Assembly: GCF_000143415.4 (NCBI RefSeq)
Contig: NW_003314447.1
Location: forward strand, 65,608 to 100,184
Direction of reading: 5' to 3'
DNA from: Selaginella moellendorffii
Lineage: Eukaryota > Plantae > Lycopodiophyta
Length of the DNA stretch: 34,577 bases
The position numbers and the translations under genes are program-made. Below are positions 1 through 22,180 of the stretch, piece after piece. Under the pieces are notes generated by a model. It was given only the letters and a program-made list of their open reading frames with translations, made no database searches and was not told the DNA's origin. How positions within the stretch are numbered: the first letter of the stretch is position 1; every line of letters begins with the position of its first letter.

Positions 1-2310
1 TGACGATGTCCCATATGCCCACCTAGCAGTATGACCAACCAAGTCCTTCCACTTCAATAATGAAGTAATGGCAGCATGGTCACCTTCAAATAACGTCTGA
101 GAACCATGTAGATATGCATGAAGTTTCTCAAAACCTAAGACTGCTAGTAAACACTCCTTCTCTATTGTGGAGTGGTTCATCTCTACTGGTTGTAATGTAT
201 GGCTTATATACACAATGGGATGGCATTGACTATGTAAACTTGAGTTTTCTTGCATCAACACTCCTCCAAGACCAATGTCAGAAGCATCCACGTGCAAAAT
301 AAAAGGTCGAGTATACTCAGGATATGCCAAAACCGGAGGAGTTGTCAATAGCTCTTTGAGATCCACGAATGCCCATTCATAATCCGAAGACCAGATGAAA
401 AATAACGTTGATGACTTTAGCAATGCTCGCAATGGTGTAATGCGATCAAAAAGATGATCTACAAAGTGACCGAGATATTGCACTTTGCCCAAGGAGAGCT
501 GCACATCATTTACACACTTCGGAGTAGAGAACTTTAAAATAACCATAAGTTTGTTAGGATCAACTTACAAACCCTCACAAGAAATATAGTACCCAAGATA
601 AGTTCTGTTCTTGGACCCAAACACGCACTTTGACCGCTTTAGCTTTAAACCAACCTCTCGTAGCCGATTGTAAGCTCCTGAGTTTGGACTTCCCGAGAGG
701 TCACCCAGCCCAGTACTATTCAAACCCAAGGACGCTTAACCCCAAGTATCCCAAGACCCTTAACTGATTGGAAAAGGGGGTGCACTCTTGTTCATGGGCC
801 CTTTCCCTCTATATTTGAACCCCAACGGATCGTCTCTCGAGTCGTTCCCTTTGGTTGCTTACACCGATCCAACACTTTACGAACATCACGAACATGCTCC
901 TCCCACATCCCCTTCGAGTGGATCAAGATATCATCAATGAAGTTAACAGTCACCTCCAACATATCGCAAAGAACCTCATCTATCATCTGCTGGAAAGTTG
1001 CTAAAGCATTGTTCAAACCAAATAACATCACCAAGAACTCGTACAATCCAAATGGTGTATGAAAAACAATCTTAGAAATATTTTCTTTGGCCATTGGTAC
1101 TTGCCAGTACCTAGAAACAAAATCTAGCTTGGTGAACCAACAATTTTGCCCTAGACGATCCAAAAGATTAATAGTGTGAGGAAGAGGGTACATATCCGGG
1201 AATGTCACTTCATTTAACGGATGATAGTCAATGCAAAAACGAATACTCCCATCAAGCTTCATCACAAGATGAGGTTCACATGCCCAAGGACACCGTGACT
1301 TCCGAATAACACCCCTTCTCCAACATCTCCTTAACGTTTGCGCATAAAATCTTGATCTCTTTGCGAGACTGATGACGAATAGGAACCTTGATTGGACGAG
1401 CATCCCCGGTTGCAATCAGATGACGTGTGGCAATCTTGGCCCCAGATGATGTGTCAAAGTCAAAAAGATCAGAATACTCCTTTATGAGTTGGTCAACCGC
1501 TGCAACACAAAGATTGTTGAAGGGACNNNNNNNNNNNNNNNNNNNNNNNNNNNNNNNNNNNNNNNNNNNNNNNNNNNNNNNNNNNNNNNNNNNNNNNNNN
1601 NNNNNNNNNNNNNNNNNNNNNNNNNNNNNNNNNNNNNNNNNNNNNNNNNNNNNNNNNNNNNNNNNNNNNNNNNNNNNNNNNNNNNNNNNNNNNNNNNNNN
1701 NNNNNNNNNNNNNNNNNNNNNNNNNNNNNNNNNNNNNNNNNNNNNNNNNNNNNNNNNNNNNNNNNNNNNNNNNNNNNNNNNNNNNNNNNNNNNNNNNNNN
1801 NNNNNNNNNNNNNNNNNNNNNNNNNNNNNNNNNNNNNNNNNNNNNNNNNNNNNNNNNNNNNNNNNNNNNNNNNNNNNNNNNNNNNNGTAAACGGCAACTT
1901 GTGGCAATAGGTTGAGCAATAGAAGATAAACTCGAATCTGTATCAACCAATATAGAGAGAATAATAGGAGACCTCTTGTTATAAAAACGAGTTTGGAAAA
2001 TAAACACTAAATGAACCAATGCCGAGTGAACCCCTTGATGATACTCCCGAAAGAAAGATGGAGGGGTCACTAAATTATTCGCGCAAGGTCCCTCCATTAC
2101 TCGCACGACTCCTCGTTTCCCGGATGCATTGCAGTGTCTAGACCTTCCACTACAGTAGCACCAATAGGACATTGTTGATGCCAAAGTCTCCACTTAGGAA
2201 ATGGAGGTTGCCAATCTAGAAAATGCTGACAAAGTCAATAAATGTGCCCAACTTCATCACATGCCCAACAGCGAATGTCACAGCCATGACCATGTCCTCG
2301 ACCCTGTCCT
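1..2310 (-). mobile_element. Degraded Ty3/gypsy LTR retrotransposon internal region (gag zinc knuckle, protease, RT, RNase H)
   Basis: Minus-strand translations give CWACDEVGHIY*LC (zinc knuckle, ~2230-2280), ILVDTDSSLSS (protease, ~1920-1960), RFCIDYHPLN...LDFVSRYWQV...FGLNNALATFQ...FIDDILIHS (RT) and RNase H-like sequence toward position 1. Contains frameshifts, stops and an N gap. Confidence 0.9.
669..863 (-). mobile_element. Cassandra-type (5S rRNA-bearing TRIM) solo LTR, 195 bp
   Basis: TGTAAG...CTTACA termini and a perfect CCGAT TSD (664-668/864-868). The minus strand has GTTAAGCGTCCTTGGGTTTGAATAGTACTGGGCTGGGTGACCTCTCGGGAAGTCC, matching the plant 5S rRNA internal promoter region. Removal rejoins RT (KVLDR|LREVGLKLK). 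Confidence 0.92.
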
Positions 2311-2859
2311 TGGACTCTCGTGTGTGTGTGGTTTTTCAACAGTAGAATGAAGAGTTATTAATGTTATAGCATAATATATGTTTTCAGTTTCACTAAAGAG
2401 TAAAGATTGATATATTCTTACTGCTTTTTCTAAATGCAACACTATTGAAACTTGATTGGAGCACTTAAATAAAATTTTATAAACTATAAATTTATTATAT
2501 AAAAAAAATAAATTTATGATATAATTTTTATGTTTACAATTATCTAAAGCAAAAATAAATTATTAAATTCAAAAAGATATATAAGTTTCTTTTGAAGTCA
2601 ATATAATAGTTAATCCTTGTTCTAACTTTTTAAATTAATTGTAATCTAAAATAAAAAAAGAGTAAATTTATAGAGTTTTTAGTTTAACAACTATAGTAAA
2701 GTGATTTTTCTTAGAAGACAATTGTAATTGACATTGTTGTAAGTAACAAAATCAAACTACTTACCAAATAGGAGGATCTTTGCATAGGATAAATAAACCT
2801 CCTTAAATGGAATGATCTAGAAAGCAACAGTTGAATTATGCCATAAAATCTTAAATTCA

Positions 2860-3250
2860 CAAATACTAAAACTAACAAGATATACCTGACTAAGATGTAC
2901 ACTATCTATAAGTATATATATTTCCNNNNNNNNNNNNNNNNNNNNNNNNNNNNNNNNNNNNNNNNNNNNNNNNNNNNNNNNNNNNNNNNNNNNNNNNNNN
3001 NNNNNNNNNNNNNNNNNNNNNNNNNNNNNNNNNNNNNNNNNNNNNNNNNNNNNNNNNTAAAGGTATTAGTTCTATTCTCATTGAGCTTAACAAATGGCAC
3101 TATACACATGTCCCAGAAGTGCAAGAAAATTTGTTATCTATGAAAAGCCTTACTGATACTAGTGTTCAATTTTCTGGAGATCAACACAGTATTACTTTTT
3201 ATTTTGATGTGGTCAAGGTGATGCACAGTACCTATTTACAAGTTTGATGC
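2860..3250 (+). mobile_element. Ty1/copia pol (protease region) relic, left-arm copy
   Basis: Mirror of 20131-20520; HVPE.QENLLSMKSLTD resembles the copia V.HVP...NLLS motif. Partly within an N gap. Confidence 0.45.
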
Positions 3251-3988
3251 TATTTTAGTGCCTCTCCTTGTCAAAGAATCTAAGATGCACTGATTCTAGC
3301 ATAAAAAGTATGAAAGTAGAAATGTCGCATACACTTTGGGATTGCTTGCTGATCCTGTATCCCACCTCCTATTGGTTATGGACAAGATCAGGCTTTTTTC
3401 ACATTAAAGCCTTCCGTTCTTAATAATGTTATGAAAGATCAGTAGTCCAGTGGTGCCTTGGTTTGAGCTATGCAAAAGAATATTTGTGATAGTTACTCAT
3501 TTTATGCCCTAGAAAGTTCGTGGCATTTGGTGCGGTGACAACTGGGATGCTTCCAGATAGAACAGAAAGTGGTAGTTCTGCACCATCAAGCTCCTGCTGC
3601 TCTCACTAGCAATAATCAAGAGGCACGAGAGATTTAGTTCTCCTGTGACAGATCAATGCGGGGGTGATCCTAGGGAACTGTAATCACCCCTTTGGCGCTT
3701 GTCAAAAGCCTCGACCACGCTCTTGCTGAGAAAGTGTTAAAGCTGACAGTGAGGGTGGCGCCCTCCTTCGCATAAACCTTTCATGTAGACACCATGGAAG
3801 TCTGGCTAGTAAATATCCTTGATGCGTCTCAAGAATCGGGGTGATTTTTGGGTGCTAAAATCGGGAGGAGTATCAAGCTCGGGAGAAAAAGCGGGCTTGT
3901 TTGATTCCCCCAAACCCACCAGGCACATGGAGAACTTCGTCCACTTGAGCTGCCTGAGGATGGAATTGCCTGTTCGTGACAGGAATGG

Positions 3989-4369
3989 ATGGTGAATGTG
4001 TGGCGTCGATGCTCCAAGCACAGCCCTGAACCTGGAAAGATCACACCGAAAGCTTACAAAGTCTACTTCTCTGGAAGTTCATACCTCTCAACCTTGGTCC
4101 CTGAAAACGTATCCCGCCGCCAGGGCGCCAAACACAAGGTCAGCGTCGAGAAAGCTACACTGCGAGGAGGAGGAGGAGCGACAGGAGGAGCGCCTGCGAT
4201 CGATCATGTCTTGTCAATGGAATCAGACGAGACAAGAGAACCAGCTGCCAGGGCTGGAGCCGCCGCTGCGCCGATAGGCCAGGAAATGGATTATCACAGC
4301 AGTCTCCAGCTTGCCCACGTCAATCTGCGCAAGGCTGAGGTGCTCCCGATGCCAGAGCATCCGCATTGA
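3989..4369 (+). other. Unassigned 126-aa ORF in GC-rich sequence, possibly a gene fragment (identical copy at 19009..19389 on the - strand)
   Basis: Open frame with ATG in gene-like composition; no family recognised. Confidence 0.25.
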
Positions 4370-4405
4370 TGATCGACGATGATTCAGTATTTGGTATTTA
4401 CAAAT

Positions 4406-4620
4406 ATCGGGAAGAGAATCGAACCCGAAACGTTTGTTCTGGGAGACCGATGTCCTAAATGACTGGTCTAAGCTGTTTTTGTGAGCCGGCGAACCAGAAT
4501 AATGGCTCCTTATTTAGCAAAATTTTTGCATAAAAGTCCTTGTTGAGTGGACCCTTCGGCATCGAACCCGGGTCTTCTACAACGGTTTACCTCTACACTT
4601 ACCTGATAGCCATCATCTCG
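4406..4620 (-). other. Two degenerate tRNA-like (Pol III A/B-box) relics, left-arm copy
   Basis: Reverse complements of GGTTCGATTC and ACCCGGGTTCGATGCC B-boxes; no intact cloverleaf. Confidence 0.4.
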
Positions 4621-4804
4621 GCAACCGGGTTCCCGGAATAAAAAAATCATACCATGTACTTGAACCATATGACAGGGGTCTTTGCGAAATCCATGGCGTT
4701 TTTGTTAGATCGCCCACCAGACGAGATTATCCCCCGCATTCGTGCTGCTCGGCGTTTCGTCCTTGGCAAAGCCCCCTCTTGGGTTGTGAATCGAAATGGA
4801 TCGT

Positions 4805-5915
4805 CAAGAGTTATGGCCTGGGTTGCAATAGAAACTCGCAGAGCAATCTCCACAGCCGCAGGAGCTTTGCGATCTTCTGCTGGTGTGAATCTCATCAGTC
4901 CCAAAACTCCACGTTTCGGCAATCCAACGAAACCTGTAGCGTGTGGCCATTCAAACGAACATACCTCGGTATCATCCTCGCCTGCCTCGATGCCTGGAGA
5001 GTAACAGTCCCGGGAAGAACCATCATTTGCCCGAAACGAAATGACGATGGATCCCCTTGCATTCCCGCTGCCAGCCAAGTACCAGCTTGTGTAGAACTGA
5101 GCCCGAGCCGGAGACCAATCCACCGGGGCTGAGCTCGCTGTGTGTGCCAGAAAAAGAGAGCCTGAAGAGGACGCGAGCACCCGACTTGGAGCAGGGCTGA
5201 GACTGAAAACACGACTGTCCGCGAAGTTGATGCCTGTTTCTTCGCTGAGATCTCCAGCCAAGTGCTTCGCCAAGCTCTCCTCCAGCTCCAGATAGACACT
5301 ACTTGTAGTTGCAAGCGGGCACTTGCCTACCAGCTTTGAGCCAAACATGCTGGAGAGTGTCCAGTCTTGCAGCTTTCGGAAAACAACCTGCTCCAATGTC
5401 GTGCCTTCTTCGTCCCGATCGAAGTCACCGGAAGTGATAAGCAGCCTCTGGGAATGGTACATACCACTGTAAATCGTCTGCCTGTCCAGGAGCGTCGTGA
5501 GCCCAGCCTTGTCTCTACATGGGAGAAGCGTGAGCCATGGCGTGAGCCGTGGCATTCTACAGAGTGCTTCTCTCGGGAGTGCTCGCTCTTGCTCCATTTC
5601 TTTCCTTTCACCACCCTCTTCATGCCAGGAGCGTCGAAAGCTCCTCCTCCTCCTGTCCGGTTTGCCTCGGGCCTCGACGAGAACCACGGCCCCAAGAACG
5701 TAGTTGGCAATTCGAGGAAGTTGATCGATGCGCAAAAGAGGCCCGAGAGAGCGTGCGTGAGGTTTCCCCACGTCGAATCCACCTCTGCCTCTGGAAATGC
5801 CATGAGCTCCACTCCCACTGGCTTGGCGGCGAGCTGCGCGATCGGATCGCCCACGCCCCAGCGCTCGTTGTTCCATCGCCCTTGCCATGTCTTTGATTCG
5901 AAACTTCCGGACCTG
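4805..5915 (-). pseudogene. GPI16: GPI transamidase subunit PIG-T/GPI16 pseudogene fragment (left arm)
   Basis: Motifs split across frames: VRKFRIK.M / QGRWNNERWG..DP / AKPVGVEL...W.NLTHALSGLFCASINFLE / LPREA.C / LTPWL.LLPCRDKAG...YHSQRL / DWTLSSMFG. Small deletions and frameshifts; truncated before the C-terminal GFLHID region. Confidence 0.88.
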
Positions 5916-6684
5916 TTCCAAGCGATTCTTTCATCATCGTTTCGGGATTTGAGGATGGAAGATCGACAAAAGAAAGGGCAAAAGGAGGATAGGGTTGGAT
6001 TTTACCTCTCAAAAGCCTCGACCACTGAGAAACGTACTTGGAGTAAGAGTTCGCAGCCTTGGAGGCATGGAGGGCAATGAGATCACTCTTCTGAAGGCCA
6101 TGGGTGTTTGCACTGTGCTGGGAGATTCTCTCCAAGGGCAAGTAAATGTGTGCTTGAATTCTTTCTAGTAGTTGAGTTTATATGTATGGAAAGTGTGGGC
6201 TCATTGAGATGCATTTGATTGAGCAGGATGAAACATGATGATCAGTGTGTACGTGTTGCATGAGTGTGGTAAGCAAGCAATCCACCTCTATGCATACTTA
6301 TGTACAAAATGAGTTGATGTTTTGCCAATGCTTGCTCAATGTTGCATGACCATTTGTTTGGTTGCAATTTTGTCTACCCAGATTGTTCTTATTAGCATGT
6401 ATATTGAGTGCAATAGTCTTGAAGTGCAATTATCTTTTAGTGGAGTTTTGAGCCTTGGACGATTGTCATTTAGCGCATATACTTGCAAGACAATTACCAA
6501 GTAGGAAGGCCTGAGATAAAAAAAGATCACCTTCTCATGGTTTTAGATGCTTGTTTTTCTCTTGAAGTTCTTTGAACTGATAATCACATTTATAAGCTAA
6601 ATGTATAAATATACATTTGTGATACATTTCTGTTTTGGTTGAGATGTCTCTATTGCCTAAGAAGTAAAGCAAGTCCTCATACCA

Positions 6685-8010
6685 CAAAAAGGCGATGGAT
6701 GTCTCCATCAATTGTTGAAATGCTCTTTTAAGGACTTAAGAACTACTAAAGAAAAGTGCAAGACATTTGGGAAGGAGAGATGTGAATAGGACCTTGCATG
6801 TTATTTTTGGTGTTGGATTAGTGATTGCTAAAGGAGCTATCTTGCCATCAATTTTCTGTTGATCAGTTTTTTTTTTTTTGTACTTATGTGGTTGTTATCT
6901 TTGCAAACTCTTCCTCAAAATCTTGATTGCATTGATCTATCCCATTGGAGCCTTTTGCTGGAAGATGACAAAGGTACATTCTCGATTGCACATTGCTTAA
7001 GCTGCTATTAATAGCAATCCGTCCCTTGTGTTACAATGCTATTATCAATGAATGGTTGTTTCTAGACATGTTAAAAACGTGGTGGTCATAGCTCTGGATG
7101 AAGCTTCCAACACCTCTTTGTGCTGTGAGTCTTGATGTTGCAATGGGACCAATACCAAGAGTGTGGAGCACATTGTGGCTTCTCAGACTGTTGTAAGCAG
7201 CAAGTATAGAATTTTTGGAACATTTTCTTTTGGATTTACTACTACTACTTCTAGATGATTTCCTTGTACCTTATAAGCTCCATCAAAGACTTTTTGATCA
7301 CTGTAAGAATTTCATCATCAATAGCGGTAGAAGCAGTAGGTATATGAGAGATAGTTGCATATAAAGCTTCCAACAAGAGAGGGAGGAAAGCCCCCTCAAC
7401 CCTAGAGATACTGAGCTCCTGGAGAAAAGCACGCTCTAAAATCTTAGCAACTACAAAAGTTTTATGACATGTCCAAAAACTACAGTTCCACACACTCCTT
7501 TCAGTAGGCACTAAAACACATTACATACTCTAGCATTGACTCGCAAGCTCTTTGTCAAAAGGTAAACAAGTCTATGAGCAAACAATTTACTACCCATTAT
7601 TGATCAAAATATGATTTGAATGAAGCCTTGAACATGGTGTAGTCCACTATATCTGCCTTCAAAAGAGTCTTTGCCTATATTGTTGCTCGGCTGATAAGCG
7701 ATCGAGAGGTCTCGAAACTTGTCATCATCATTGCCAATGTCATTTGATGCATAATATTACTTATGTGTGTCTTGGGCAAGATGTCTCCATTGCCTAAAAA
7801 GTAAGGCAAGTTCATCCTATATTGCACAATATGGATTTGAAGATGAACTGCTATAGGTAATAGATGCCAACACTCACTATTTGCCGAAGTCTCTAAATCC
7901 TTAGCTGAAAGAGCCATTTGATATTATAGCTCATAATGGATACGTGAATAATGACTATTAACTTGAGGAATATTGTTGATAGTAAGCAGACATTGAATAT
8001 GTGTGGATCT
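6685..8010 (-). mobile_element. Ty3/gypsy gag relic, inverted homologue of 11235-12627
   Basis: MNLPYFLGNGDILPKTHI matches 11435 onward; clear reverse-complement similarity along its length (e.g. 7090-7190 vs 12125-12230). Confidence 0.75.
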
Positions 8011-8187: not shown

Positions 8188-9297
8188 TATGAGACATAAA
8201 ATCCCTAGGCCCCAAAGTGGAGTTGAAAGGGTGCCACGTGGTAGTGGCCGAAGTGAAAGCTAAACAAGCATAACTCATTTGGACTAAAAGCTCTAACTTG
8301 AAAAGTTGAGAGGGGGAGTGGAACTCCCAACGAAGGGCTTAAGTAACAAGCACGAAGCGAGCTATGAGTGAGTCTCTAAAAAAGGGGCTAGTTTGGCCAG
8401 GAAAGGCCAGTTTGGCCCAGGAATGCCATACCCAGCTGTTGGTTGATGGGATGACCATTGAAAAGTCCAAGGCTAGAGTGAATACAAACCGACAAGTGGG
8501 GTAGCTTGGTGAAGTGTTCAAGAGCCAACTCTAGTTCCCTCGGGAGATCGAATGATCGATGCTCCTAGTCCAAGTGTGGGTGGCATTACCTACTTGGATA
8601 CCTGGCGTGGCTCAACAGAACCTCGCTCTAAGCCCATGGCTAGAGCACCCAAAGGTGGAAGGCGAGGAGAGTACCCAAGAGGCTCACGTAGGCCCATGGT
8701 GTTCCGAAATGTTGTCCCAAAGTCCCAGACTGTGGAAAGGAAGAGGTGTAGTCTTCTACAATGGTGATCAAGGATACAGTCACACTGTGAGGAAGTCCTA
8801 GTGGACAGTGGGACTTGGTGGTTGGGCCTGCAGGCCTTAATCCAGTGGTAGTATTGGCAAATACGGCCATAGACAAAAAGGGACTTGGTGGGGACAGGAA
8901 AAGAGATATTGGGGAAGGTTATTCCTCTTGTCTGCGAGCATCCTAAACATGTTAAGGAGTGGATCTAGGATGATCACTTATGGATGGATGGCTCAGTCTT
9001 TGAGAAATGGGACTGTGATGTAAATGGTGTTAGATCACCGGTGTGACCAAGGTGAATGGGCATCGCCTTAGCGTAACGGGCTGATATGTCGGTGGTACCG
9101 TGGGGTGTCGGTCATGGGATCGGACACGTGGAGCACTTGGACCAAGTGTAATGGTTGAGTGGCCTGGATGCCATTCTTGGGGCTAGCAAGTCCTTAAGTT
9201 CAAAATAAGACTTATGGAGGTTGTGAGTGAGACTCCTCCAAGTGGTCAGAAGTGTGGTTAAGTGACTAAAGTAGAATTGAAAATTTAGTCGCTTACA
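8188..9297 (+). mobile_element. Solo LTR (~1.1 kb) with TSD
   Basis: T(A)TGAGAC...GCTTACA termini, TTTAC TSD at 8183-8187/9298-9302, and homology (inverted) to 12633-15336. Strand is relative to that copy only. Confidence 0.85.
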
Positions 9298-9575
9298 TTT
9301 ACTTCAAATATCAAATCATGCATTTTCATGGACAATCCATCTACTAATTTTTTTTTCTCAATTGGTTCTAAAACTATTAAGGCACTAATTTAATTAGTAT
9401 TTGAAGGAACAAAAACTAATGAAATGATGTTCCAAAATGACAAAGCAACAATGATCAGTGATAAAACCATATGTTTCCTTTAAAGGAGTAGCTTGCACTA
9501 CCCTAGCTTTTCAATTTTTATTTCTACAAATGTAGCAAGTGTTAAATAATTATACTCCCATAATATATGTATTAT

Positions 9576-9835
9576 TGTGAGGAATCAACTCCCCGAAGTT
9601 GTTGTAGGCGAAAAGATTCCAAAATCAAAACTAGAACAATAAAAAGTTCATCAGATAAGATTGAGACTAAGTTTGAAACTAAGTCTGAGATTTGAGATTG
9701 GGTTTGAGACTGAGTTCAAAACCGAGTTTGAGATTCAAGTCAAAGATCAAATTCAAGATTGAATCCAAGGTTAAATCCAAGGTTGAGTCTAAGATTGAGT
9801 CTGAGATCGAGTTTGAGACCAAATTTGAAGTACAT
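9576..9835 (+). mobile_element. LTR 5' portion, same family as 29832-30576, with degenerate 6/12-bp repeats
   Basis: TGTGAGGAATCAACTCCCCGAAGTTGTTGTAGG resembles TGTAAGGAACCAACTCCCCAAGGTGTTGTAGG and is followed by GAGTCTGAGATC-like repeats. Confidence 0.6.
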
Positions 9836-11234
9836 TAAAGAGAGCAAGTGTGACTTTATTAAGATGGAGAGCATAGTTTAGAGCATTAGGAATATTTTGA
9901 TTCCTAAAATATTCCCCTATCTTTGTGTGCAAGAGAGCAAGGGCAAAGAGGGTATTTAGGGTAAATGGAAAGAGCTTATGGAGGCTTTTAGAGCTAGAAT
10001 TAGAGATGTTAGGAAAAACCCCTCATCTCCCAACAAATGGTGAACTTAGTGTGACAAGTTAATCTAGCTTTCTTTGGAGAATAAGAGAATTTTCTAGATG
10101 GATAGAGAGATTTTGGAGTTTTAGTGGCTAGATTCATGTTTGGGGGATCTCTAGCACTGATAAAAACTCCCCTTGCACGAATTTGAAACATAGACTTATA
10201 AATCTAGAGTTCTTGGTGTTGTTTTTCCACTTCACTTTATTTCACACGATTTTGAAGACATTTTTACTGATAGAAGCATTCACTTTGGTTGTGCCTTATT
10301 TGAGTCAAACCAGCTTCTCCTCCTCTTTCTAGAGAGTTAAAGAACACTTGATTTGGTGGAGAATCAAACTGCGTGCAAGCATTTTTCTTTCACAATTTAC
10401 CCTTGTTTTCACAATTTATTTTTAGAGGTTTAAACTTGAGATTTTAGCATGGATTTGGAGAATTGCATGAGTGGGCATTTAGATCTGGTCATGAGGATTC
10501 CAAAAAGTGCTTTTTTGATAAATAAAGTTTAAAAACTGGGGAGATTTTTCATTTTTTCTTGCTCCTTTTCTTCTTTTCTTTTTACAATTGAGTTCTAAAA
10601 CTCTAACAATAAGATTTCCTAAGTGTTTTGTGAAATTCTTTCTTGAGTTTCTCCCTTTGCTTCTCAGCTTTCATAAAAGTCCTTTCTTGCAAGGGAATTT
10701 GCAAAGAATCATGAGTTTTGGTGTTGTTTTTATTACATATTACACAGTTGTGATTTTAAAGGGATTATTCTTTCTAGTTTCAACATCACTTTCATCTTTC
10801 TTGAGTGTTTTGGATAAATCCTCATTAGATCTTTTCATTGTGTGCTTGCATGAAACATTTAATAGCAATATAAAAAGTTTGAAACAATTTCCCACTTGTT
10901 CATTTATTTTGAGTACAAGGGGTGGTTTCAGTTATTTTCGCTCAATTTTGGGCAATTTTGGTCAATTTTTCTTTTTATGGCTATGTAGATGGAATCAATG
11001 GTTTTCTGATGCACTATTGCTCATGCTTTTTGGCACTCTAGAGATTGAGATATTCACATTTTTGTCTTTGCAAACTTGTGAATATTGGTGAGTGATAATT
11101 TTTAGGGTTCTTAAATTCTCTAGCTTTTTTTTTTTGCTATGAGATCTTTGCATTAGATTTAAAGCATTCCAAAAGCCAAGAAGTTTTTACTCTTTAGGAG
11201 CATTTATTGCATGTAGTGACAGCTTGTTTATAGT

Positions 11235-12632
11235 AGATCCATACATATTCGATGCTTGCATATTATTAGCAATATTTTTTAGGTTTAACAGTCATTATAC
11301 ACATATCTATTATAAACTATATTATCAAATGGCTCTCTCAACTGAGGAGGATTCAGAGTCTTAGGCAAATACCAAGTTTGGGCATCCATTATTATAGTAA
11401 TTCCTCCTGTAATCCATATTGTGCAACATGGGATGGACTTGCCTTACTTCTTAGGCAATGGGGACATCTTGGCCAAGATACACATTCTACAGTTTGAGCA
11501 ATATTATGCATCAAATGACATTTGTGATGATGATCATAAGCTTCGAGACTTCTCTCAATCTTTTACTACCTAAGCAACAGCATGGGCAGAGACTCTTTTG
11601 GAGGCAGATATGGTGGACTACACCACATTCAAGACCTTATTCAAATCACATTTTGATTAGCAGTGGCTGGCAAATTGTTTATTTATGGACTTGTTTGCCT
11701 TTCAACAAAGAGCTCGTGAGTCAGTGCTAAAGTATGTGATGCATTTTAGTGCCTATGGGAGTGTGTGGAGCAGCAGGTGATCACCAATGAGCCTCATAGT
11801 ATCACGGCATTCATCTCTACACTCAAGAGGAATTTCTAACACAAGATGCTCAAGAGGCAATTTTGGATATGTCACGAGACTTTTGCAACTGCTGAGACTT
11901 TAGAGTGTGATCTTCTCTAGGAACTTAGTATCTCCAAGGTTGAGGGAGTTTCATATGCAGCTATCTCTCATATAACTACTGCTCCTGCTGTCGTTGATGA
12001 CAAATTTTCTATAGTGATTAAGAAGGCTTTGATGGAGCTTGTAAGGTACAAAGAGATCATTTAATAACAATAGCAAATGCAAGAGAAAATCCTTCAAGAG
12101 CTCCATACTTACCACTTATAGTAGGTTGAGAAGCCACAATGTGCTCCACACTCTTGGTATTGCTCCCATTGCAACATCACAACTCACAGCATAGAGAGGT
12201 GTTGGAAGCTTTATCTAGAGCTGTGACCACCACATTTTCAATGTGTCCAATTCACTGATAATAGCACTATAACACAAGCAAAGGATTGCTACTAACAACA
12301 ACTTGAGCAGCATGCAATCTAGGATGTACCTTCATCATCTTCCAACAAAGGAAAATCTCTAATGGGACAAGTTAATGCAATCAAAATCCCAAGGAAGAGT
12401 TTGCAAAGACAATAGCCACATGAGCACAAAAGAAGAAAACAACCAATCAAGAGAAAATTGATGGCGATCTAGCTCCTTTAGCAATCACTAATCCAACACT
12501 AAAGGTGGCATGTAAACTCCCATTCACGTCTCTCCTTCCAAGATATCTTGCACCTTCCTTTGGTAGGGACTTGCAGTGTGCACTTCAACAATTGATAGAA
12601 ACATTTGTCACCTTTTTGTGGTGTGAGCTTTC
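11235..12632 (+). mobile_element. Ty3/gypsy gag relic; continues after the LTR insertion into protease at ~15480-15780
   Basis: MDLPYFLGNGD...FEQYYASNDI.DDDHKL..F...ATAWAE...FK.LFKSHF...QQRARESVLKY (retrotransposon gag) and zinc knuckle CSHCNITTHSIERC at ~12158-12200. Confidence 0.8.
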
Positions 12633-12771
12633 TGTAAATGACTAAATTTTCCATTTTACTTTAATCACTTAACCACACCTCCAACCACTTGGAGGAATCT
12701 CACTCACAACCTCTATAAGTCCTATTTCGGACTTGGGTTTGCTACCCCCAAGAATGGCATCCTTGCCACTC

Positions 12772-14610: not shown

Positions 14611-14649
14611 CTAGGGTTTAGGAGACGAACGCTTTGGGCTTTCACCCTC

Positions 14650-15095
14650 TCAGACTCGGGCTCAAACTCGGGCTCGGACTCAGACTTGGACTCGGACTCG
14701 GGCTTGGGCTCAGTCTCGGCCTCGGCCTCGGTCTCAGTCTCGGTCCCGATCTCGGTGTCGACCTCGGACTCCATCTCAGGTCCATCTTGAACTCCATCTT
14801 AGACTCCATCTCAAGTCCATCTCGGACTCCATCTCGGACTCCATCTCGGGTCCATCTCAGGTCCATCTCGGACTCCATCTCGGGTCTATCTCAGACTCCA
14901 TCTCGGACTCCATCTCGGGTCTATCTCAGACTCCATCTCGGACTCCATCTCGGACTCCATCTCGGACTCCATCTCGGGTCCATCTTGGACTCCATCCTGG
15001 GTCCATCTCGAACTCCATCACGGATCCATCTTGGGTCCATCTCGAACTCCATCTCAAATTCATCTTGGGTCCATCTCGGACTCCATCTCAGACTC
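14650..15095. repeat. Minisatellite of 6-bp (GACTCG/GGCTCG) and 11-12-bp (GGACTCCATCTC/GGGTCCATCTC) units
   Basis: Directly visible tandem array. Confidence 0.95.
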
Positions 15096-15479
15096 CTTTT
15101 TAGACACTTCCACATGTCATGTGTTGGTCCTTTTGAGTCCCTTTTTGAAGCTTTGCTTATTGCTCGCTTTGTGCTTGTTCCTCGAGCACTTTGTTGGGAG
15201 TTCCACTCCCACTCTTGACCTTTCAAGTCGGAACTTTTAGTTCAAACATGTTACGCTCGTTTGGTTTTCGTTTCGGCCACCACCACATGGCACCCTTCCG
15301 GCTCCACTTTGGGGCCTAAGGATTTTGTGTCTCACACTTTTATGTATGATTCCTAGCTTTAGATAGCATCTAAAGGACTTTACAAGGTCTACTAAAGCCA
15401 TAGCCTCTTTCCTATAGGATGTGCACATCATTGACATAGCCTCCTCTTCTAATCTAGATGCAATTTTTGCACTTATAGG

Positions 15480-15780
15480 CTTTGGCAATAGTTCTCCCAT
15501 CATCAATGCTCTTGTTGATTTTGGATCTGGGAGTAATGTGATCTCTTCAGCCACAAGAGTAGGTTTTCAAGTCTTTAGAAGCACAACTCTAATCCTAAAG
15601 ATGTTTGCAAACTACACTGTTATCCCCACGGGCATTTGACGTAGTGTTCAAGTTTACATTAATGGGGTGGAATCTTTTTTGAACTTTGTGGTGGTAAACT
15701 ACCAAAAGTTCAGCTCCACACCTTTGAAGGACTCTCTCATCATTGGATAAGTTTGGCATGATTAGGTTTGACGCATCACA
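15480..15780 (+). mobile_element. Retrotransposon aspartic protease relic
   Basis: PIINALVDFGSGSNVIS...LKMFANYTVIPTGI. Confidence 0.7.
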
Positions 15781-17465
15781 AATTGGTCACTCGGCATAAT
15801 AGAGATTAACGACAATCACTGAACTTCTTATTTCTATAATGCTTGTGGACACTCTTTGTTGGGAAAGCTTCAAAAATAGCCTTTAGGACTATCTCAAAGC
15901 CAATCAATATCCTTCGAGCCAATATTATCTTCCTTGACACCCTTTCCCCACTCACTGACTATTATCTTTCTTGAGTTGATCAAAGATCCATCACAGCTTA
16001 AGTTCAACATGTTCCAGTGCAATACTAATACAGGCTTCCCCAATTTTCATAGCAAACACTCAGTTTGATCAGAGTGATGGCCAACTTCAAGAGTCGCCAA
16101 TCTTCCTAGTGGAGGCTCTTCTGATGACATCATTTCTTTTCAAGTGTGGACCTTATATGGAGGATCTCCTCTCAATTGCAGCTTAGTCTTAGAGCCTTCA
16201 TCATGGTACTCCAATGAAGCATGTGCATTCTATGGCATCCATGACCTTTGAAGTGGGAACAATGATTATGAGTGAGAGTAGCCCAGCCTCTTTATTTGAT
16301 TAGACTACTTGTACTTTCATAGATTTCCAAGTATTATTGCTTGCGCTATCTTGCGCCATACTACAAACTTCCAACTTTCCAACATGGACAAGCTTCATGC
16401 TTGTGACATGGAGATCCTTGCCCTTGATGAGCAATGTAGGGCTTCAATTGAGCAAACCAAGGCAGACATTGACTCCAAAGTTCCTAGTTTAATCATCTTT
16501 TCTCCTGAACAACTTGTCATCCTCCAAATTTTCTTTACAGTGGCTTAGCCTCTACTTCATCTAGTGCTAAGTGGAGGGTGGTTCCTATATGCTTGCCAAT
16601 AAAATTGGCCATGAGCTTCCACATGCTCACAATCATCACCACCTCAAAGCATTAATGTAATGACTTCTTTTTTCTTTTTTCCCCATTTTCTTTCACCTCT
16701 TCTCTTTTGTCTTCAGGTTTTACTACCTTGGTGCATGGGTTCCAGCTTGGATTTCAGCCACAAGGTTGCATCAACTTTTTTCATATATGAGCTTTTACGA
16801 TTTCTTGGTGAGTTCTCAATTGTTTTCTGGATCTATCACTTTCACTTTATCCCATCATTCATCACTTTTTTTTTATCTCAAGCCTTCCTAGTGCATTTTG
16901 CTCTATCACAAATGTATATTGCAACTTTCCATGCCAACTATATGTGCTAAATGACAATTATCCAAGGCTCAAAACTCCACTAAAAGATACTTGAACTTCA
17001 AGACTATTGCACTCAATATACATGCTAATAAGAACAACCTGGGTAGAGACAAAATTGCTACCTGGCAAAACATCAACTCATTTTGTCCCTTCTAGACATA
17101 AGTATGCATAGAGGTGGATTGCTTGCTTACCACACTCAATCATCGTGTTTCATCCTGCTCAATCAAATGCATCTCAATGAGCCCACACTTTCCATACATA
17201 TAAACTCAACTACTAGAAAGAATTCAAGCACACATTTACTTGCCCTTGGAGAGAATCTCCCAGCACAGTGCAAACACCCATGGCCTTCAGAAGAGTGATC
17301 TCATTGCCCTCCATGCCTCCAAGGGTGCGAACTCTTACTCCAAGTACGTTTCTCAGTGGTCGAGGCTTTTGAGAGGTAAAATCGAACCCTATCCTCCTTT
17401 TGCCCTTTCTTTTGTCGATCTTCCATCCTCAAATCCCGAAACGATGATGAAAGAATCGCTTGGAA

Positions 17466-18573
17466 CAGGTCCGGAAGTTTCGAATCAAAGAAATGGCAAG
17501 GGCGATGGAACAACGAGCGCTGGGGCGTGGGCGATCCGATCGCGCAGCCCACGTCGTTGGCTGGACGTCGACGTCCACCTCTGGAAATGCCGTGAGCTCC
17601 ACTCCCACCAGCGGCGGTTCGGTATGCTCTCTCGGGCCTCTTTTGCGCATCGATCAACTTCCTCGAATTGCCAACTACGTTCTTGGGGCCGTGGTTCTCG
17701 TCGAGGCCCGAGGCAAACCGGACAGGAGGAGGAGGAGCTTTCGACGCTCCTGGCATGAAGAGGGTGGTGAAAGGAAAGAAATGGAGCAAGAGCGAGCACT
17801 CCCGAGAGAAGCACTCTGTAGAATGCCACGGCTCACGCCATGGCTCACGCTTCTCCCATGTAGAGACAAGGCTGGGCTCACGACGCTCCTGGACAGGCAG
17901 ACGATTTACAGTGGTATGTACCATTCCCAGAGGCTGCTTATCACTTCCGGTGACTTCGATCGGGACGAAGAAGGCACGACATTGGAGCAGGTTGTTTTCC
18001 GAAAGCTGCAAGACTGGACACTCTCCAGCATGTTTGGCTCAAAGCTGGTAGGCAAGTGCCCGCTTGCAACTACAAGTAGTGTCTATCTGGAGCTGGAGGA
18101 GAGCTTGGCGAAGCACTTGGCTGGAGATCTCAGCGAAGAAACAGGCATCAACTTCGCGGACAGTCGTGTTTTCAGTCTCAGCCCTGCTCCAAGTCGGGTG
18201 CTCGCGTCCTCTTCAGGCTCTCTTTTTCTGGCACACACAGCGAGCTCAGCCCCGGTGGATTGGTCTCCGGCTCGGGCTCAGTTCTACACAAGCTGGTACT
18301 TGGCTGGCAGCGGGAATGCAAGGGGATCCATCGTCATTTCGTTTCGGGCAAATGATGGTTCTTCCCGGGACTGTTACTCTCCAGGCATCGAGGCAGGCGA
18401 GGATGATACCGAGGTATGTTCGTTTGAATGGCCACACGCTACAGGTTTCGTTGGATTGCCGAAACGTGGAGTTTTGGGACTGATGAGATTCACACCAGCA
18501 GAAGATCGCAAAGCTCCTGCGGCTGTGGAGATTGCTCTGCGAGTTTCTATTGCAACCCAGGCCATAACTCTTG
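17466..18573 (+). pseudogene. GPI16: GPI transamidase subunit PIG-T/GPI16 pseudogene fragment (right arm) with a local micro-inversion
   Basis: Same motifs as the left copy; the PVGVEL...W segment is inverted at ~17548-17625. Confidence 0.88.
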
Positions 18574-18757
18574 ACGATCCATTTCGATTCACAACCCAAG
18601 AGGGGGCTTTGCCAAGGACGAAACGCCGAGCAGCACGAATGCGGGGGATAATCTCGTCTGGTGGGCGATCTAACAAAAACGCCATGGATTTCGCAAAGAC
18701 CCCTGTCATATGGTTCAAGTACATGGTATGATTTTTTTATTCCGGGAACCCGGTTGC

Positions 18758-18972
18758 CGAGATGATGGCTATCAGGTAAGTGTAGAGGTAAACCGTTGTA
18801 GAAGACCCGGGTTCGATGCCGAAGGGTCCACTCAACAAGGACTTTTATGCAAAAATTTTGCTAAATAAGGAGCCATTATTCTGGTTCGCCGGCTCACAAA
18901 AACAGCTTAGACCAGTCATTTAGGACATCGGTCTCCCAGAACAAACGTTTCGGGTTCGATTCTCTTCCCGAT
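18758..18972 (+). other. Two degenerate tRNA-like relics, right-arm copy
   Basis: B-boxes GGTTCGATGCC (18810-18820) and GGTTCGATTCT (18953-18963); A-box-like TAGACCAGTCATTTAGGACA. Confidence 0.4.
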
Positions 18973-20130
18973 ATTTGTAAATACCAAATACTGAATCATC
19001 GTCGATCATCAATGCGGATGCTCTGGCATCGGGAGCACCTCAGCCTTGCGCAGATTGACGTGGGCAAGCTGGAGACTGCTGTGATAATCCATTTCCTGGC
19101 CTATCGGCGCAGCGGCGGCTCCAGCCCTGGCAGCTGGTTCTCTTGTCTCGTCTGATTCCATTGACAAGACATGATCGATCGCAGGCGCTCCTCCTGTCGC
19201 TCCTCCTCCTCCTCGCAGTGTAGCTTTCTCGACGCTGACCTTGTGTTTGGCGCCCTGGCGGCGGGATACGTTTTCAGGGACCAAGGTTGAGAGGTATGAA
19301 CTTCCAGAGAAGTAGACTTTGTAAGCTTTCGGTGTGATCTTTCCAGGTTCAGGGCTGTGCTTGGAGCATCGACGCCACACATTCACCATCCATTCCTGTC
19401 ACGAACAGGCAATTCCATCCTCAGGCAGCTCAAGTGGACGAAGTTCTCCATGTGCCTGGTGGGTTTGGGGGAATCAAACAAGCCCGCTTTTTCTCCCGAG
19501 CTTGATACTCCTCCCGATTTTAGCACCCAAAAATCACCCCGATTCTTGAGACGCATCAAGGATATTTACTAGCCAGACTTCCATGGTGTCTACATGAAAG
19601 GTTTATGCGAAGGAGGACGCCACCCTCACTGTCAGCTTTAACACTTTCTCAGCAAGAGCGTGGTCGAGGCTTTTGACAAGCGCCAAAGGGGTGATTACAG
19701 TTCCCTAGGATCACCCCCGCATTGATCTGCCACAGGAGAACTAAATCTCTCGTGCCTCTTGATTATTGCTAGTGAGAGCAGCAGGAGCTTGATGGTGCAG
19801 AACTACCACTTTCTGTTCTATCTGGAAGCGTCCCAGTTGTCACCGCACCAAATGCCACGAACTTTCTAGGGCATAAAATGAGTAACTATCACAAATATTC
19901 TTTTGCATAGCTCGAACCAAGGCACCACTGGACTACTGATCTTTCATAACATTATTAAGAAAGGAAGGCTTTAATGTGAAAAAAGCCTGATCTTGTCCAT
20001 AACCAATAGGAGGTGGGATACAGGATCAGCAAGCAATCCCAAAGTGTATGTGACATTTCTACTTTCATACTTTTTATGCTAGAATCAGTGCATCTTAGAT
20101 TCTTTGACAAGGAGAGGCACTAAAATAGCA

Positions 20131-20520
20131 TCAAACTTGTAAATAGGTACTGTGCATCACCTTGACCACATCAAAATAAAAAGTAATACTGTGTTGATCT
20201 CCAGAAAATTGAACACTAATATCAGTAAGGCTTTTCATAGATAACAAATTTTCTTGCATTTCTGGGACATGTGTATAGTGCCATTTGTTAAGCTCAATGA
20301 GAATAGAACTAACACCTTTAGCCTCATAGAATTTTGCATTGGTGACTCCACAATAGGTATTGGTGTAGGCAAGCTTACTGTTTGAAAAAAATTTAGTCAA
20401 TTTCTTAGCACTCAAAATTGTTGAATACATTGTCCTATTGAAAGGTGATCTAGGAAATATATATACTTATAGATAGTGTACATCTTAGTCAAGTATACCT
20501 TGTTAGTTCTAGTATTTGTG
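20131..20520 (-). mobile_element. Ty1/copia pol relic
   Basis: GVTNAKFYEAKGVSSILIEL...HVPEMQENLLSMKSLTDISVQF, with a decayed ILD-like protease motif upstream. Confidence 0.5.
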
Positions 20521-21234
20521 AATTTGAGATTTTATGGCATAATTCAAGTGTTGCTTTCTAGATCATTCCATTTAAGGAGGTTTATTTATCCTATGCAAAG
20601 ATTTCTCCTATTTGGCAAGTAGTTTGATTTTGTTATCTACAACAATGTCAATTACAATTGTCTTCTAAGAAAAATGACTTTACTATAGTTGTTAAACTAA
20701 AAACTCTATAAATTTATTCTTTTTTTATTTTAGATTACAATTAATTTAAAAAGTTAGAACAAGGATTAACTATTATATTGACTTCAAAAGAAACTTATAT
20801 ATCTTTTTGAATTTTAGAAATTAAAATTTAAAAGTTTTTATTTTTCAATTGTGTATAGTATAGAGTAAATAAGCTATAGTTCATTTTTGATTTAGATATT
20901 TGTAAACATAACAATTATATCCTAAATTTATTTGTTTTATATATTAAATTTAAAGTTTATAAAATTTTATTTGGGTGCTTCAATGAAGTTTCAATTGTGT
21001 GGCATTTTGAAAAAGTAGTAAGAATATCAATCTTTACTCTTTAGTGAAATTCCATAAAATTTGATTTTGCTAAACACTGGAAATATATATTGTGCCATAA
21101 CATTAGAAAGATTTAATAACTCCTTGTTCTACTGTTGAGAAACCATTCAAATATGCTAACAATTTCATAAATGTTATTTTAATATGAACATTCATATGAG
21201 CTAATTTTTATTAATATAAGCATTCGTATGAGCT

Positions 21235-22180
21235 CCTTTTTAAAATAAAAGGTCTATTATTATTCTCTCCGTATTATTTGATATAGGTTTGAGTTTATGT
21301 TCTATTGCTCAAGCTATTGCTACACATTGCCATCTACACTTGTGTCATGCAGTGGAGCTAATTTTCATTTTTTATGGCAATAGCTATACACATGTATATG
21401 CATGGGATGAGGCAGACCTAGTTGTGTGTATGGATTAACTACATGATGTTGGTTTAAAGCTAAAGCGGTCGAACTGTGTATTTGGGTATACAAGGACACA
21501 ACTTATCTTAGGTACTGTATTTCTCATGAGAATTTGCAAGTTGATCTTAACAAATTTGTGGCTATTTTAAAGTTCTGTACTTCGAAGTATGTGAATAATG
21601 TGTAACACTTCCTAGGAAGGTGCAGTATCTCAGTCGTTTTGTGGATCATTTTTTTATCACAGTACACTATTGTAAGCATTACTGAAGTTATCAAGATCAT
21701 CTTTCATCTAGTCTTCAGCTTGTGAGCGGGTGTTCATGGATCTCAAAGAGCTATTGAGGATTCTTCCAATTTTGGCATATTTTAACTACATTCGATCTTT
21801 CATTTTGAGTGTGGATGCTTTTGATATTGATTTTGGAGGCGTGTTGATGCAACAGAGTCTGAGTGTGCCTGGTCAGTGCCATCTCATTGCATATATAAAC
21901 TATACATTACAACTAACAAAGATGAATTACTCCATGACAAAGAAGGAGTGTTTAGTAGCAGTTTGGGGTTTCAAGAAACTTCATGCATATCTACATGGTT
22001 TTCGGACATTATTAAAAGGTGATTATGCTACTATTACTTCAGTATTGAAGTGGAAGAACTTAGTTGGTCATATTGCTCGGTGAGCTTTGAAGCTTCAAAT
22101 ATATGATTTTAATGTTGTTCATCACTTGGGGAGTTCTATGGCTGATGCTGATGCTATTTTTCGAGCTCCTCTTCATTCTT
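21235..22180 (+). mobile_element. Degraded Ty3/gypsy pol (protease, internal deletion, RT end, RNase H); mirror homologue of the element at 1-2310
   Basis: ILSVLFDIGLSL; VGLKLKRSNCVFG; SVDAFDIDFGGVLMQ...NYSMTKKECLVAVWG...GHIAR* (RNase H). Confidence 0.85.

What the first reader, a model, noticed from the sequence alone, without database searches (positions are those of the whole stretch)
1..22180. ~22-kb palindromic locus with a steep identity gradient, suggesting arm-to-arm gene conversion
Mirror symmetry covers three layers: the outer gypsy pol (1-1990 vs 21235-22085), the arms (2330-6535 vs 16860-21145) and the inner gag relics (6685-8010 vs 11235-12627). The outer and inner TE pairs are heavily diverged with many indels, so the duplication is old. 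Yet ~3770-5750 vs ~17630-19610 appears identical (all mirrored ORF translations match). Mismatches rise gradually outward: about one per 100 bp at 3.1-3.8 kb and far more beyond 2.6 kb. A pseudogene should not stay identical by protein-level selection. This points to repeated intra-palindrome conversion or selection for pairing, perhaps with slower mutation of unmethylated core DNA.
Basis: partly seen in the sequence, partly recalled or inferred. Interest (0 to 1): 0.75.

Follow-up and report, generated by a model that had tools for sequence, protein, structure and literature searches.

The report
Inverted PIG-T pseudogene pair, gene-converted core
In the spikemoss Selaginella moellendorffii, two mirror-image copies of a broken GPI-transamidase (PIG-T) gene fragment sit inside an old, decayed inverted duplication, and their centres have been copied onto each other repeatedly (gene conversion); this is a clean but ordinary example of a well-known process.

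Summary
Arms 2329-6535 and 16860-21145 are inverted copies. 3762-5752 equals 17626-19616 with no mismatch over 1,991 bp. Divergence rises outward on both sides in steps: 0, about 1.2, 3-4, 10, then 15-23%. The 132-N gap is collinear to the base with 132 real bases in the partner arm, and both cores lie in one gap-free contig.

The arms carry a frameshifted genomic copy of PIG-T/Gpi16 (residues 72-483). The window belongs to a 108-kb Selaginella moellendorffii scaffold with five near-identical copies.

- Four flanking layers share one old distance (K2P 0.18-0.23).
- Stratum edges fall on heterologies, including a ~77-bp micro-inversion exactly at the core's inner edge.
- The right arm is a chimera: it has another subfamily's inversion but the left arm's core residues.
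- Protein sites among the paralogues fail the four-gamete test.
- Identity covers 888 non-coding bases.

The "gag" label is unverified, the inner layer is mirrored but not collinear, and exchange probably involves the whole cluster. Exact zero divergence still needs long reads.

This is a known kind of event. The scan noted similar partly homogenised inverted duplications elsewhere in this genome (s1-363765, s1-334462, s1-403004).

The parts
2329..6535 (-). Left arm of the inverted repeat (gene sense on the minus strand)
   Evidence: Collinear alignment with the reverse complement of 16860-21145
16860..21145 (+). Right arm of the inverted repeat (gene sense on the plus strand)
3762..5752 (-). 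Zero-mismatch core, left copy (1,991 bp): 888 bp non-coding, 156 bp ORF tail, 947 bp PIG-T-derived
17626..19616 (+). Zero-mismatch core, right copy
3058..3761 (-). Outer ~1.3% stratum (9 mismatches, 8 of them transitions); partner 19617-20320
5833..6242 (-). Inner ~1% stratum (4 mismatches), bounded by the micro-inversion and an 18-bp indel; partner 17139-17548
5753..5832 (-). Patch in ancestral orientation; it encodes the native PIG-T peptide in the sense frame
17549..17625 (+). Derived ~77-bp micro-inversion (with small indels) of the same patch. It is the marker of a paralogue subfamily (P0003, P0046-50) and forms the inner edge of the identical core
4806..5914 (-). PIG-T/Gpi16 fragment (residues 72-483 of P0007), frameshifted, with internal deletions; runs into intron sequence after residue 483
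17467..18572 (+). PIG-T/Gpi16 fragment, right copy
4650..5888 (-). 413-codon ORF identical to P0041 (the annotated protein this window encodes); scrambled PIG-T reading
17493..18728 (+). Right-arm ORF; its first 318 residues equal P0045 and its last 316 equal P0039
1..1415 (-). Ty3/gypsy pol relic on the left: RNase H 1-564, RT 795-1415
   Evidence: Pfam RT_RNaseH_2 8e-29 and RVT_1 4.5e-18
21233..22085 (+). Ty3/gypsy pol relic on the right (RNase H 21712-22080; RT region deleted); K2P 0.22-0.23 to the left copy
1527..1886 (.). Assembly gap (360 N) inside the left pol; continuity not testable because the partner has a deletion there
2926..3057 (.). Assembly gap (132 N), exactly collinear with 20321-20452 in the partner arm
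6676..8010 (.).
11235..12627 (.). Inner relic G', inverted relative to G but displaced next to the spacer
8190..9297 (.). Blocks X (8190-8389) and Y (8381-9297). Partners are X' 15136-15334 and Y' 12633-13543 and 13593-14367 (Y' is tandemly duplicated, K2P 0.08)
15335..16859 (.). Block U, present only in the right half; no similarity to G or to the spacer
9298..11234 (.). Unique central spacer
23096..23807 (-). Third, separate PIG-T relic (residues 252-287 and 485-639, with an intron-sized insert), outside the palindrome

Best explanation
An old inverted duplication in a transposon-rich part of the Selaginella moellendorffii genome copied a block made of a truncated Ty3/gypsy pol, a broken genomic copy of the PIG-T gene with its surroundings, and further repeat relics. 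The two halves then diverged to about 0.22 substitutions per site and were rearranged on the inner side.

The middle of the arms has since been homogenised several times by homology-dependent, non-reciprocal copying (non-allelic gene conversion). This happened between the two arms and probably also with the three other near-identical copies on the same 108-kb scaffold. Each tract ended where homology was interrupted by an indel or by a ~77-bp micro-inversion. The region still able to convert therefore shrank from about 4.2 kb to 3.9, then 3.2, then 2.0 kb. That leaves nested strata of about 10%, 3-4%, 1.2% and 0% divergence.

Shown here: the anatomy, the strata, the heterologies at their edges, the chimeric right arm, and the mosaic pattern among paralogues. 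Inferred: the conversion mechanism itself, the order of events, and the donor of each tract.
For: (1) Age of the frame. Four independent flanking segments on both sides give one distance: pol 0.23 and 0.22, G 0.22 and 0.22, X 0.23, Y 0.18. Pol and arm are collinear across their junction in both halves.

(2) Significant steps. 0/1,991 against 13/1,114 gives Fisher p = 1.6e-6; the 1% against the 3-4% strata gives p = 0.002; 3% against 10% gives p = 0.002. The permutation maximum was 569 bp against the observed 1,991 bp.

(3) Step edges sit on heterologies: a 53-bp indel at 2565, the micro-inversion at 5753-5832, an 18-bp indel at 6243 and a 13-bp indel at 6481.

(4) Chimera. The inversion is shared with P0003 and P0046-50 on other scaffolds. 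Those copies have T, M and L at three core sites where the right arm has the left arm's M, A and F.

(5) Four-gamete violations among paralogues at M/T x G/A, T/R x G/A and inversion x M/T. In the inner stratum the left arm shares a derived D with copy E while the right arm keeps the ancestral E.

(6) Identity covers 888 bp outside any ORF.

(7) The assembler kept copies C, D and E apart although they differ from L and R by only 1-2 residues in 413. That argues against consensus collapse.

(8) GC and CpG o/e peak in the converted core, including its non-coding part, as expected with GC-biased repair or open chromatin.

(9) The pattern matches the published signature of interlocus conversion (PMC3966223).
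Against: - All paralogue evidence is therefore at protein level and comes from gene models.
- No reads were available, so a few true differences in the core could be hidden by consensus calling in a Sanger assembly where no read spans 1,991 identical bases.
- The left arm abuts an N gap whose length equals the partner's to the base, which is unexplained.
- The two subfamilies differ by only a few percent in the core, so the patch's high divergence may come from the inversion event itself rather than from age. It is a weaker internal control than it first seemed.
- With five near-identical copies, a recent duplication burst could explain part of the similarity.
Confidence: 0.65

Rival explanations
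1. Assembly or consensus effect. The palindrome and most of the gradient are real, but the exact 0% core arises because reads lying wholly inside a near-identical 2-kb repeat could not be assigned to an arm. Both consensus sequences then took the same majority base.
For: The assembly is a Sanger-era, two-haplotype assembly (PMC3442193; scaffold sizes). The left arm starts right after an N gap. The gap length equals the partner length exactly, which hints that scaffolding of this arm was not independent. Similar near-identical cores are reported at other inverted duplications of this assembly.
Against: Both cores lie in one gap-free contig. The assembler resolved 9 differences in the adjoining 704 bp and kept three further copies apart that differ by 1-2 residues in 413. 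Even at worst this hides only a low divergence. The step from about 20% to 1% or less, the chimera and the heterology-bounded strata all remain.
Confidence: 0.12
2. Nested younger duplication or insertion rather than conversion. A young 2-4-kb PIG-T repeat unit, a member of a dispersed family, was placed independently (transposon-like or by templated insertion) into two old copies of the same decayed element. The core is then young because it arrived late.
For: The unit is multi-copy: five copies on this scaffold and many models on at least six others. A perfect 17-nt direct repeat brackets a 2.3-kb block in both arms. The standard caveat that a partial recent duplication mimics conversion is stated in PMC3966223.
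Against: There is no sharp young/old boundary; four nested strata appear on each side. No terminal inverted repeats, target duplications at stratum edges or LTR hallmarks were found. The direct repeats do not coincide with any stratum edge. Two independent insertions at the same point of two old copies are unlikely. The right arm's chimeric state still needs an exchange. The retrocopy variant is rejected because the arms keep intron sequence.
Confidence: 0.12
3. Constraint rather than exchange. The core stays identical through selection (on the 413-codon ORF, or on arm pairing for a hairpin RNA) and/or through a much lower mutation rate in unmethylated DNA.
For: A 427-codon stop-free run exceeds all 1,000 dinucleotide shuffles (maximum 358). 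RefSeq annotates the copies as proteins with isoforms. The core keeps its CpGs (o/e 0.82) in a CpG-depleted neighbourhood.
Against: Identity is complete at every site, including 888 non-coding bases. The ORF reads PIG-T in three different frames. A rate difference cannot give 0/1,991 beside 1.2%, nor make the right arm chimeric. The two gene copies diverge from an 11.9-kb spacer, so their own transcripts are identical and not complementary. There is no Rfam match.
Confidence: 0.04

Closest known systems
Non-allelic (interlocus) gene conversion between linked paralogues, e.g. C. elegans hsp16 inverted modules and col-12/col-13 (reviewed in PMC3966223)
   Same: A near-identical core covering coding and non-coding sequence, with strongly diverged flanks; an identical tract longer than the flank divergence allows (the GENECONV criterion); close linkage; inverted orientation is permitted.
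   Different: Here the converted unit is a frameshifted gene relic in transposon debris. Several nested strata are visible, one tract edge is a micro-inversion, and no cross-species confirmation was possible.
Sex-chromosome palindromes with arm-to-arm conversion (human/primate X and Y, willow; PMC8981503, PMC7023750)
   Same: Inverted arms around a unique spacer; homogenisation by intrachromosomal conversion; raised GC in the converted sequence.
   Different: Those arms are tens to hundreds of kb long, more than 99% identical along their whole length, and carry functional genes. Here only about 3.2 kb of 4.2-kb arms is 98.7% identical or better, the frame is about 20% diverged, and nothing links the locus to a sex chromosome.
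Gene conversion between LTRs and other repeats in plant genomes, including S. moellendorffii (PMC7251063)
   Same: Same genome type and the same process acting on repeats. It shows that identity is not a reliable age measure for repeats in plants.
   Different: That work concerns direct LTR pairs of single elements, not an inverted segmental duplication carrying a gene relic.
Inverted duplications of target genes as hairpin-RNA or proto-miRNA loci in plants (from my own knowledge: Allen et al. 2004)
   Same: Inverted duplication of a fragment of a host gene (PIG-T), with perfectly pairing arms.
   Different: The spacer is 11.9 kb, the copies are divergently oriented, no fold-back transcript is evident, and no small-RNA data were available. 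I do not file the locus here.

Membership tests
Non-allelic gene conversion between paralogues | Identical tract significantly longer than expected from the divergence of the flanking aligned sequence | tested here: met
   1,991 bp against a permutation maximum of 569 bp; P = 7e-11 at the adjacent rate
Non-allelic gene conversion between paralogues | The duplication is demonstrably older than the identical tract | tested here: met
   Four flanking segments at K2P 0.18-0.23, collinear with the arms on the outer side
Non-allelic gene conversion between paralogues | Mosaic or incongruent relationships among copies along the sequence | tested here: met
   The right arm combines another subfamily's inversion with the left arm's core residues; there are three four-gamete violations. 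This is protein-level evidence only.
Non-allelic gene conversion between paralogues | Paralogues within a genome group together against orthologues or alleles (concerted evolution) | not testable with these tools
Ampliconic palindrome of the sex-chromosome type | Arm-to-arm identity above 99% along essentially the whole arm | tested here: not met
   Only 3058-6242 is 98.7% identical or better; the arm ends are 3-15% diverged
Ampliconic palindrome of the sex-chromosome type | Two inverted arms around a unique spacer | tested here: met
GPI transamidase subunit PIG-T / Gpi16 (functional gene) | Full-length Gpi16 domain in one frame, with N-terminal signal and C-terminal membrane anchor | tested here: not met
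   Pfam Gpi16 2e-21, but only residues 72-483 of P0007 are present, read in three frames with deletions. It is a gene relic.
Ty3/gypsy LTR retrotransposon (outer and inner layers) | RT and RNase H of Ty3/gypsy type | tested here: met
   RVT_1, RT_RNaseH_2 and RT_RNaseH on 1-1415(-) and 21712-22080(+)
Ty3/gypsy LTR retrotransposon (outer and inner layers) | A gag domain in the 'gag relics', and flanking LTRs | tested here: not met
   No credible Pfam hit in eight G/G' ORFs; no LTR or PBS hallmarks at X-Y; U is unrelated to G
Hairpin-RNA / proto-miRNA inverted duplication | Arms transcribed as one fold-back RNA that yields small RNAs | not testable with these tools
   No expression data. The geometry (divergent copies, 11.9-kb spacer) argues against it; no Rfam family matched.
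False duplication (haplotig or misjoin artefact) | The two copies differ only at allelic level and are joined across gaps | tested here: not met
   The flanks are about 20% diverged with many indels and a rearranged inner layer. Both cores lie in one N-free contig.

The most novel reading that the evidence does not exclude
The perfectly pairing 2-kb core is kept identical because the palindrome acts as a long hairpin-RNA/siRNA source against the PIG-T gene family: an inverted duplication of a target gene caught at the proto-miRNA stage in a lycophyte. Conversion or selection would then preserve the pairing.
Probability: 0.04. Interest if true: 0.6.

Novelty: new member of a known kind. Interest (0 to 1): 0.3.

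Why it matters
The locus is a tidy natural record of how a duplicate pair escapes concerted evolution. It shows nested conversion strata with measurable ages (K2P about 0.11, 0.03-0.04, 0.01 and 0, against 0.22 for the duplication). The edges of those strata sit on indels and on a micro-inversion. This illustrates that small structural heterologies set the limits of conversion tracts.

For annotation of this genome it matters in two practical ways. First, identity between repeats is not a clock in Selaginella. Second, the five 'uncharacterized protein' / 'PIG-T-like' models on this scaffold are scrambled relics of PIG-T. It does not reveal a new mechanism.

Tried and rejected

(2) Each half as a composite LTR retroelement (LTR-gag-PIG-T-pol). 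The order on the left is suggestive. However, G has no gag domain, X-Y shows no LTR or PBS hallmarks and has no second copy beyond the pol, and U is unrelated to G. Not supported.

(3) Retrocopy or gene capture by the gypsy element. The arms lack intron-sized inserts over about 400 codons. However, they keep the 84-nt intron retained in isoform X2 and run into the intron after residue 483. The third relic also keeps an intron. This indicates a genomic-DNA origin, so the idea is rejected.

(4) A DNA transposon carrying the fragment. No terminal inverted repeats or target duplications were found at arm or stratum edges.

(5) The micro-inversion patch as a pure 'age control'. This is weakened because the inversion is a subfamily marker and the subfamilies differ by only a few percent in the core.

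(6) Haplotig misjoin. Rejected because of the ~20% flank divergence.

(7) A structured-RNA explanation. No Rfam match.

(8) Earlier notes for neighbouring parts of the scaffold. The tool only accepts coordinates inside the window, and the look-up by relatives came back blank, which means nothing.

(9) Banks et al. 2011 (the genome paper) is not held. The two-haplotype statement is taken from PMC3442193.

Pieces were searched by reference only. The contig is a plant contig, not human.

Full report
**Observation**

The window has two N runs, 1527-1886 and 2926-3057, and 41.5% G+C. Inverted-repeat search and BLAST of the left part against the right part show a mirror structure:

| Left | Right | Identity |
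|---|---|---|
| 17-663 | 22085-21439 | 79% |
| 1887-1991 | 21337-21233 | 81% |
| 2388-2925 | 21049-20453 | 85% |
| 3058-6485 | 20320-16935 | 96% |
| 6676-8010 | 12627-11235 | 75-79% |

3762-5752 equals 17626-19616 with no difference over 1,991 bp. There are 9 mismatches in 3058-3761, and divergence grows further out.

**Gaps**

The 132-N gap is matched by exactly 132 real bases in the partner arm, with homologous sequence on both sides. The flanks are therefore consistent with continuity. The exact equality is itself unexplained.

The 360-N gap lies in the left pol, where the right copy has a deletion, so its continuity cannot be checked from the partner.

From 3058 to the window end there is no N. 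Both cores, the spacer and all inner strata therefore sit in one contig. Only 1-2925 depends on scaffolding.

**Shape of the gradient**

The profile is stepped and roughly symmetric:

| Left coordinates | % mismatch |
|---|---|
| 2329-2564 | about 10 |
| 2565-2925 | 3.05 |
| 3058-3761 | 1.28 |
| 3762-5752 | 0 |
| 5753-5832 | a special patch (see below) |
| 5833-6242 | 0.98 |
| 6243-6485 | 4.2 |
| 6486-6600 | about 15 |

Each step is significant: core against the 1% strata, p = 1.6e-6; 1% against 3-4%, p = 0.002; 3% against 10%, p = 0.002. The identical run exceeds the longest run in 20,000 permutations (569 bp).

Most steps coincide with a heterology: a 53-bp indel at 2565, the patch at 5753, an 18-bp indel at 6243 and a 13-bp indel at 6481. 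The step at 3761/3762 has no indel. The 3%-to-1.3% step falls in the N gap.

**What the arms are**

Each arm carries a ~424-codon ORF with a Pfam Gpi16 (GPI transamidase PIG-T) match, E = 2e-21. All close relatives are from Selaginella moellendorffii.

Mapped against the full-length PIG-T (P0007), the arms hold residues 72-483. These are read in three different frames, with several deletions. The copy keeps an 84-nt intron that isoform X2 retains, and it runs into the intron after residue 483. It is therefore a copy of genomic DNA and not a retrocopy.

A third, separate relic (residues 252-287 and 485-639, with an intron-sized insert) lies at 23096-23807 on the minus strand.

**Scaffold context**

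Cluster look-up flags P0039 and P0041 as encoded by the window and places them on a 108,019-bp scaffold. That scaffold carries five such genes:

| Copy | Models | In window? |
|---|---|---|
| L | P0043/P0041 | yes |
| R | P0045/P0039 | yes |
| C | P0044/P0001 | no |
| D | P0002/P0042 | no |
| E | P0036/P0038 | no |

C, D and E match the window at only 99.3-99.8%. Further relatives sit on scaffolds of 507, 523, 54, 1,263 and 1,905 kb. The arm unit is thus a member of a locally amplified, dispersed family of PIG-T relics.

**The old frame**

The outer layer is Ty3/gypsy pol: RT 795-1415 and RNase H 1-564 on the minus strand, and RNase H 21712-22080 on the plus strand.

The inner layer is mirrored in orientation but not in order. 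The left runs arm-G-X-Y. The right, mirrored, runs arm-U-X-tandem repeats-R193-Y-Y-G.

All old layers nevertheless have nearly the same distance: pol 0.23 and 0.22, G 0.22 and 0.22, X 0.23, Y 0.18. Pol and arm are also collinear across their junction in both halves. This argues for one old duplication, followed by rearrangement, rather than independent insertions.

The homology reaches window base 17, so the palindrome may extend beyond the window.

**The micro-inversion**

The patch at the inner edge of the identical core aligns in direct, not palindromic, orientation. The left arm encodes the native PIG-T peptide there. The right arm shows that peptide only on the reverse complement. The right arm therefore carries a derived ~77-bp inversion with small indels.

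The same inversion is present in P0003 and P0046-50 on other scaffolds. That subfamily has its own core residues (T in CR.P, M in INF.D, L in SL.LAH). The right arm instead has the left arm's M, A and F. The right arm is therefore a chimera: one subfamily's inversion joined to the other's core.

Among all copies, three pairs of characters show all four combinations. In the inner 1% stratum, the left arm shares a derived D with copy E while the right arm keeps the ancestral state. These are the marks of sequence exchange among paralogues.

One caveat applies. The subfamilies differ by only a few percent in the core, so the patch's ~20% difference may come largely from the inversion event itself rather than from age.

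**Alternatives**

- *Protein-level selection* fails because identity covers 888 non-coding bases and the ORF is a frame-scrambled reading.
- *A lower mutation rate* fits the CpG profile: core o/e 0.82, including the non-coding part at 0.83, against 0-0.35 around it. But it cannot give 0 in 1,991 bp beside 1.2%, and it cannot build a chimera.
- *A hairpin function* is unlikely. The two copies diverge from an 11.9-kb spacer, so their own transcripts are identical rather than complementary, and Rfam gives nothing.
- *A transposon-like insertion* of a young unit lacks termini and predicts one sharp boundary, not four nested ones.
- *A composite retroelement or retrocopy* is not supported.
- *A haplotig misjoin* is excluded by the ~20% flanks.
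- *A consensus effect on the exact zero* cannot be excluded without reads. However, the assembler resolved 1.3% divergence next door and kept apart three copies that differ by 1-2 residues in 413.

**Mechanism proposed**

After an old inverted duplication, double-strand breaks in one copy were repaired from the other copy, or from a neighbouring copy. Heteroduplex extension stopped at indels and at the inversion. As the edges decayed, the convertible region shrank. This left strata whose distances (about 0.11, 0.03-0.04, 0.01 and 0) date the last homogenisation of each shell, relative to 0.22 for the duplication.

The G+C and CpG peak in the core fits either GC-biased repair or open, unmethylated chromatin that both mutates less and breaks more. 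The data cannot separate these two.

**Context**

The signature and its caveat are textbook for interlocus conversion (PMC3966223). Arm-to-arm conversion in palindromes is known in animals and plants (PMC8981503, PMC7023750). Conversion between repeats has been analysed in plant genomes including this one (PMC7251063). The assembly's two haplotypes are documented in PMC3442193.

Earlier notes of this scan describe similar partly homogenised inverted duplications at other loci of this genome. I did not test them.

**Limits**

The contig is from a plant.

**Verdict**

This is a new member of a known kind, of modest interest.

Noticed in passing
window 3702-3718 and 6009-6025 (minus strand); 17356-17372 and 19660-19676 (plus strand): A perfect 17-nt direct repeat (24 nt if an 8-nt insert is allowed) brackets a 2.3-kb block containing the PIG-T relic, in both arms. 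About 6e-4 such matches are expected by chance in 4.6 kb. It may be a footprint of how the block was first inserted or tandemly duplicated. It does not coincide with any identity step.
   Followed up: partly
window 2926-3057 vs 20321-20452: The estimated assembly gap of 132 N equals the length of the partner-arm sequence to the base. That is unexpected for a mate-pair estimate and hints that the gap was sized or masked in some other way.
   Followed up: partly
window 671-863 vs 14374-14566; 12772-13552 vs 13593-14373: A 193-bp piece of the left pol has a much closer copy (K2P 0.09) in the right half's inner region than the pol pair itself has (0.23). It lies next to a tandem duplication of block Y of the same age (K2P 0.08). 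This suggests a secondary templated rearrangement at roughly 0.4 of the duplication's age, which would explain the non-collinear inner layer.
   Followed up: partly
window 23096-23807 (minus strand): A third PIG-T relic, just outside the right pol, holds residues 252-287 and 485-639 with an intron-sized 57-nt insert. It carries the C-terminal part that the arm copies lack, and it keeps residues (TLT, KPEVSEDLSS) that are deleted in the arms.
   Followed up: partly
window 4650-5921 (minus strand), 17460-18728 (plus strand): A stop-free run of 427 codons crosses a relic that reads PIG-T in three frames. It is longer than in any of 1,000 dinucleotide shuffles (maximum 358). The ORF is shared by all five scaffold copies, and RefSeq annotates it with isoforms. 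Whether it is expressed or constrained is unknown.
   Followed up: partly
window 14645-15096: An array of about 450 bp of a 12-nt unit (CTCGGACTCCAT, with higher-order periods of 23-35 nt) is present only in the right half, between X' and the R193 piece.
   Followed up: no
window 25734-29367 (plus strand): A second, separate Ty3/gypsy (chromovirus-type) pol: RNase H 25734-26051, integrase 26607-27623, SH3 and chromodomain 28969-29367.
   Followed up: no
108-kb scaffold outside the window (proteins P0001/P0044 and P0038/P0036): Copies C and E are identical to each other over 413 residues and differ from L and R by one residue (A instead of G). They might form a second homogenised pair on the same scaffold.
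   Followed up: no
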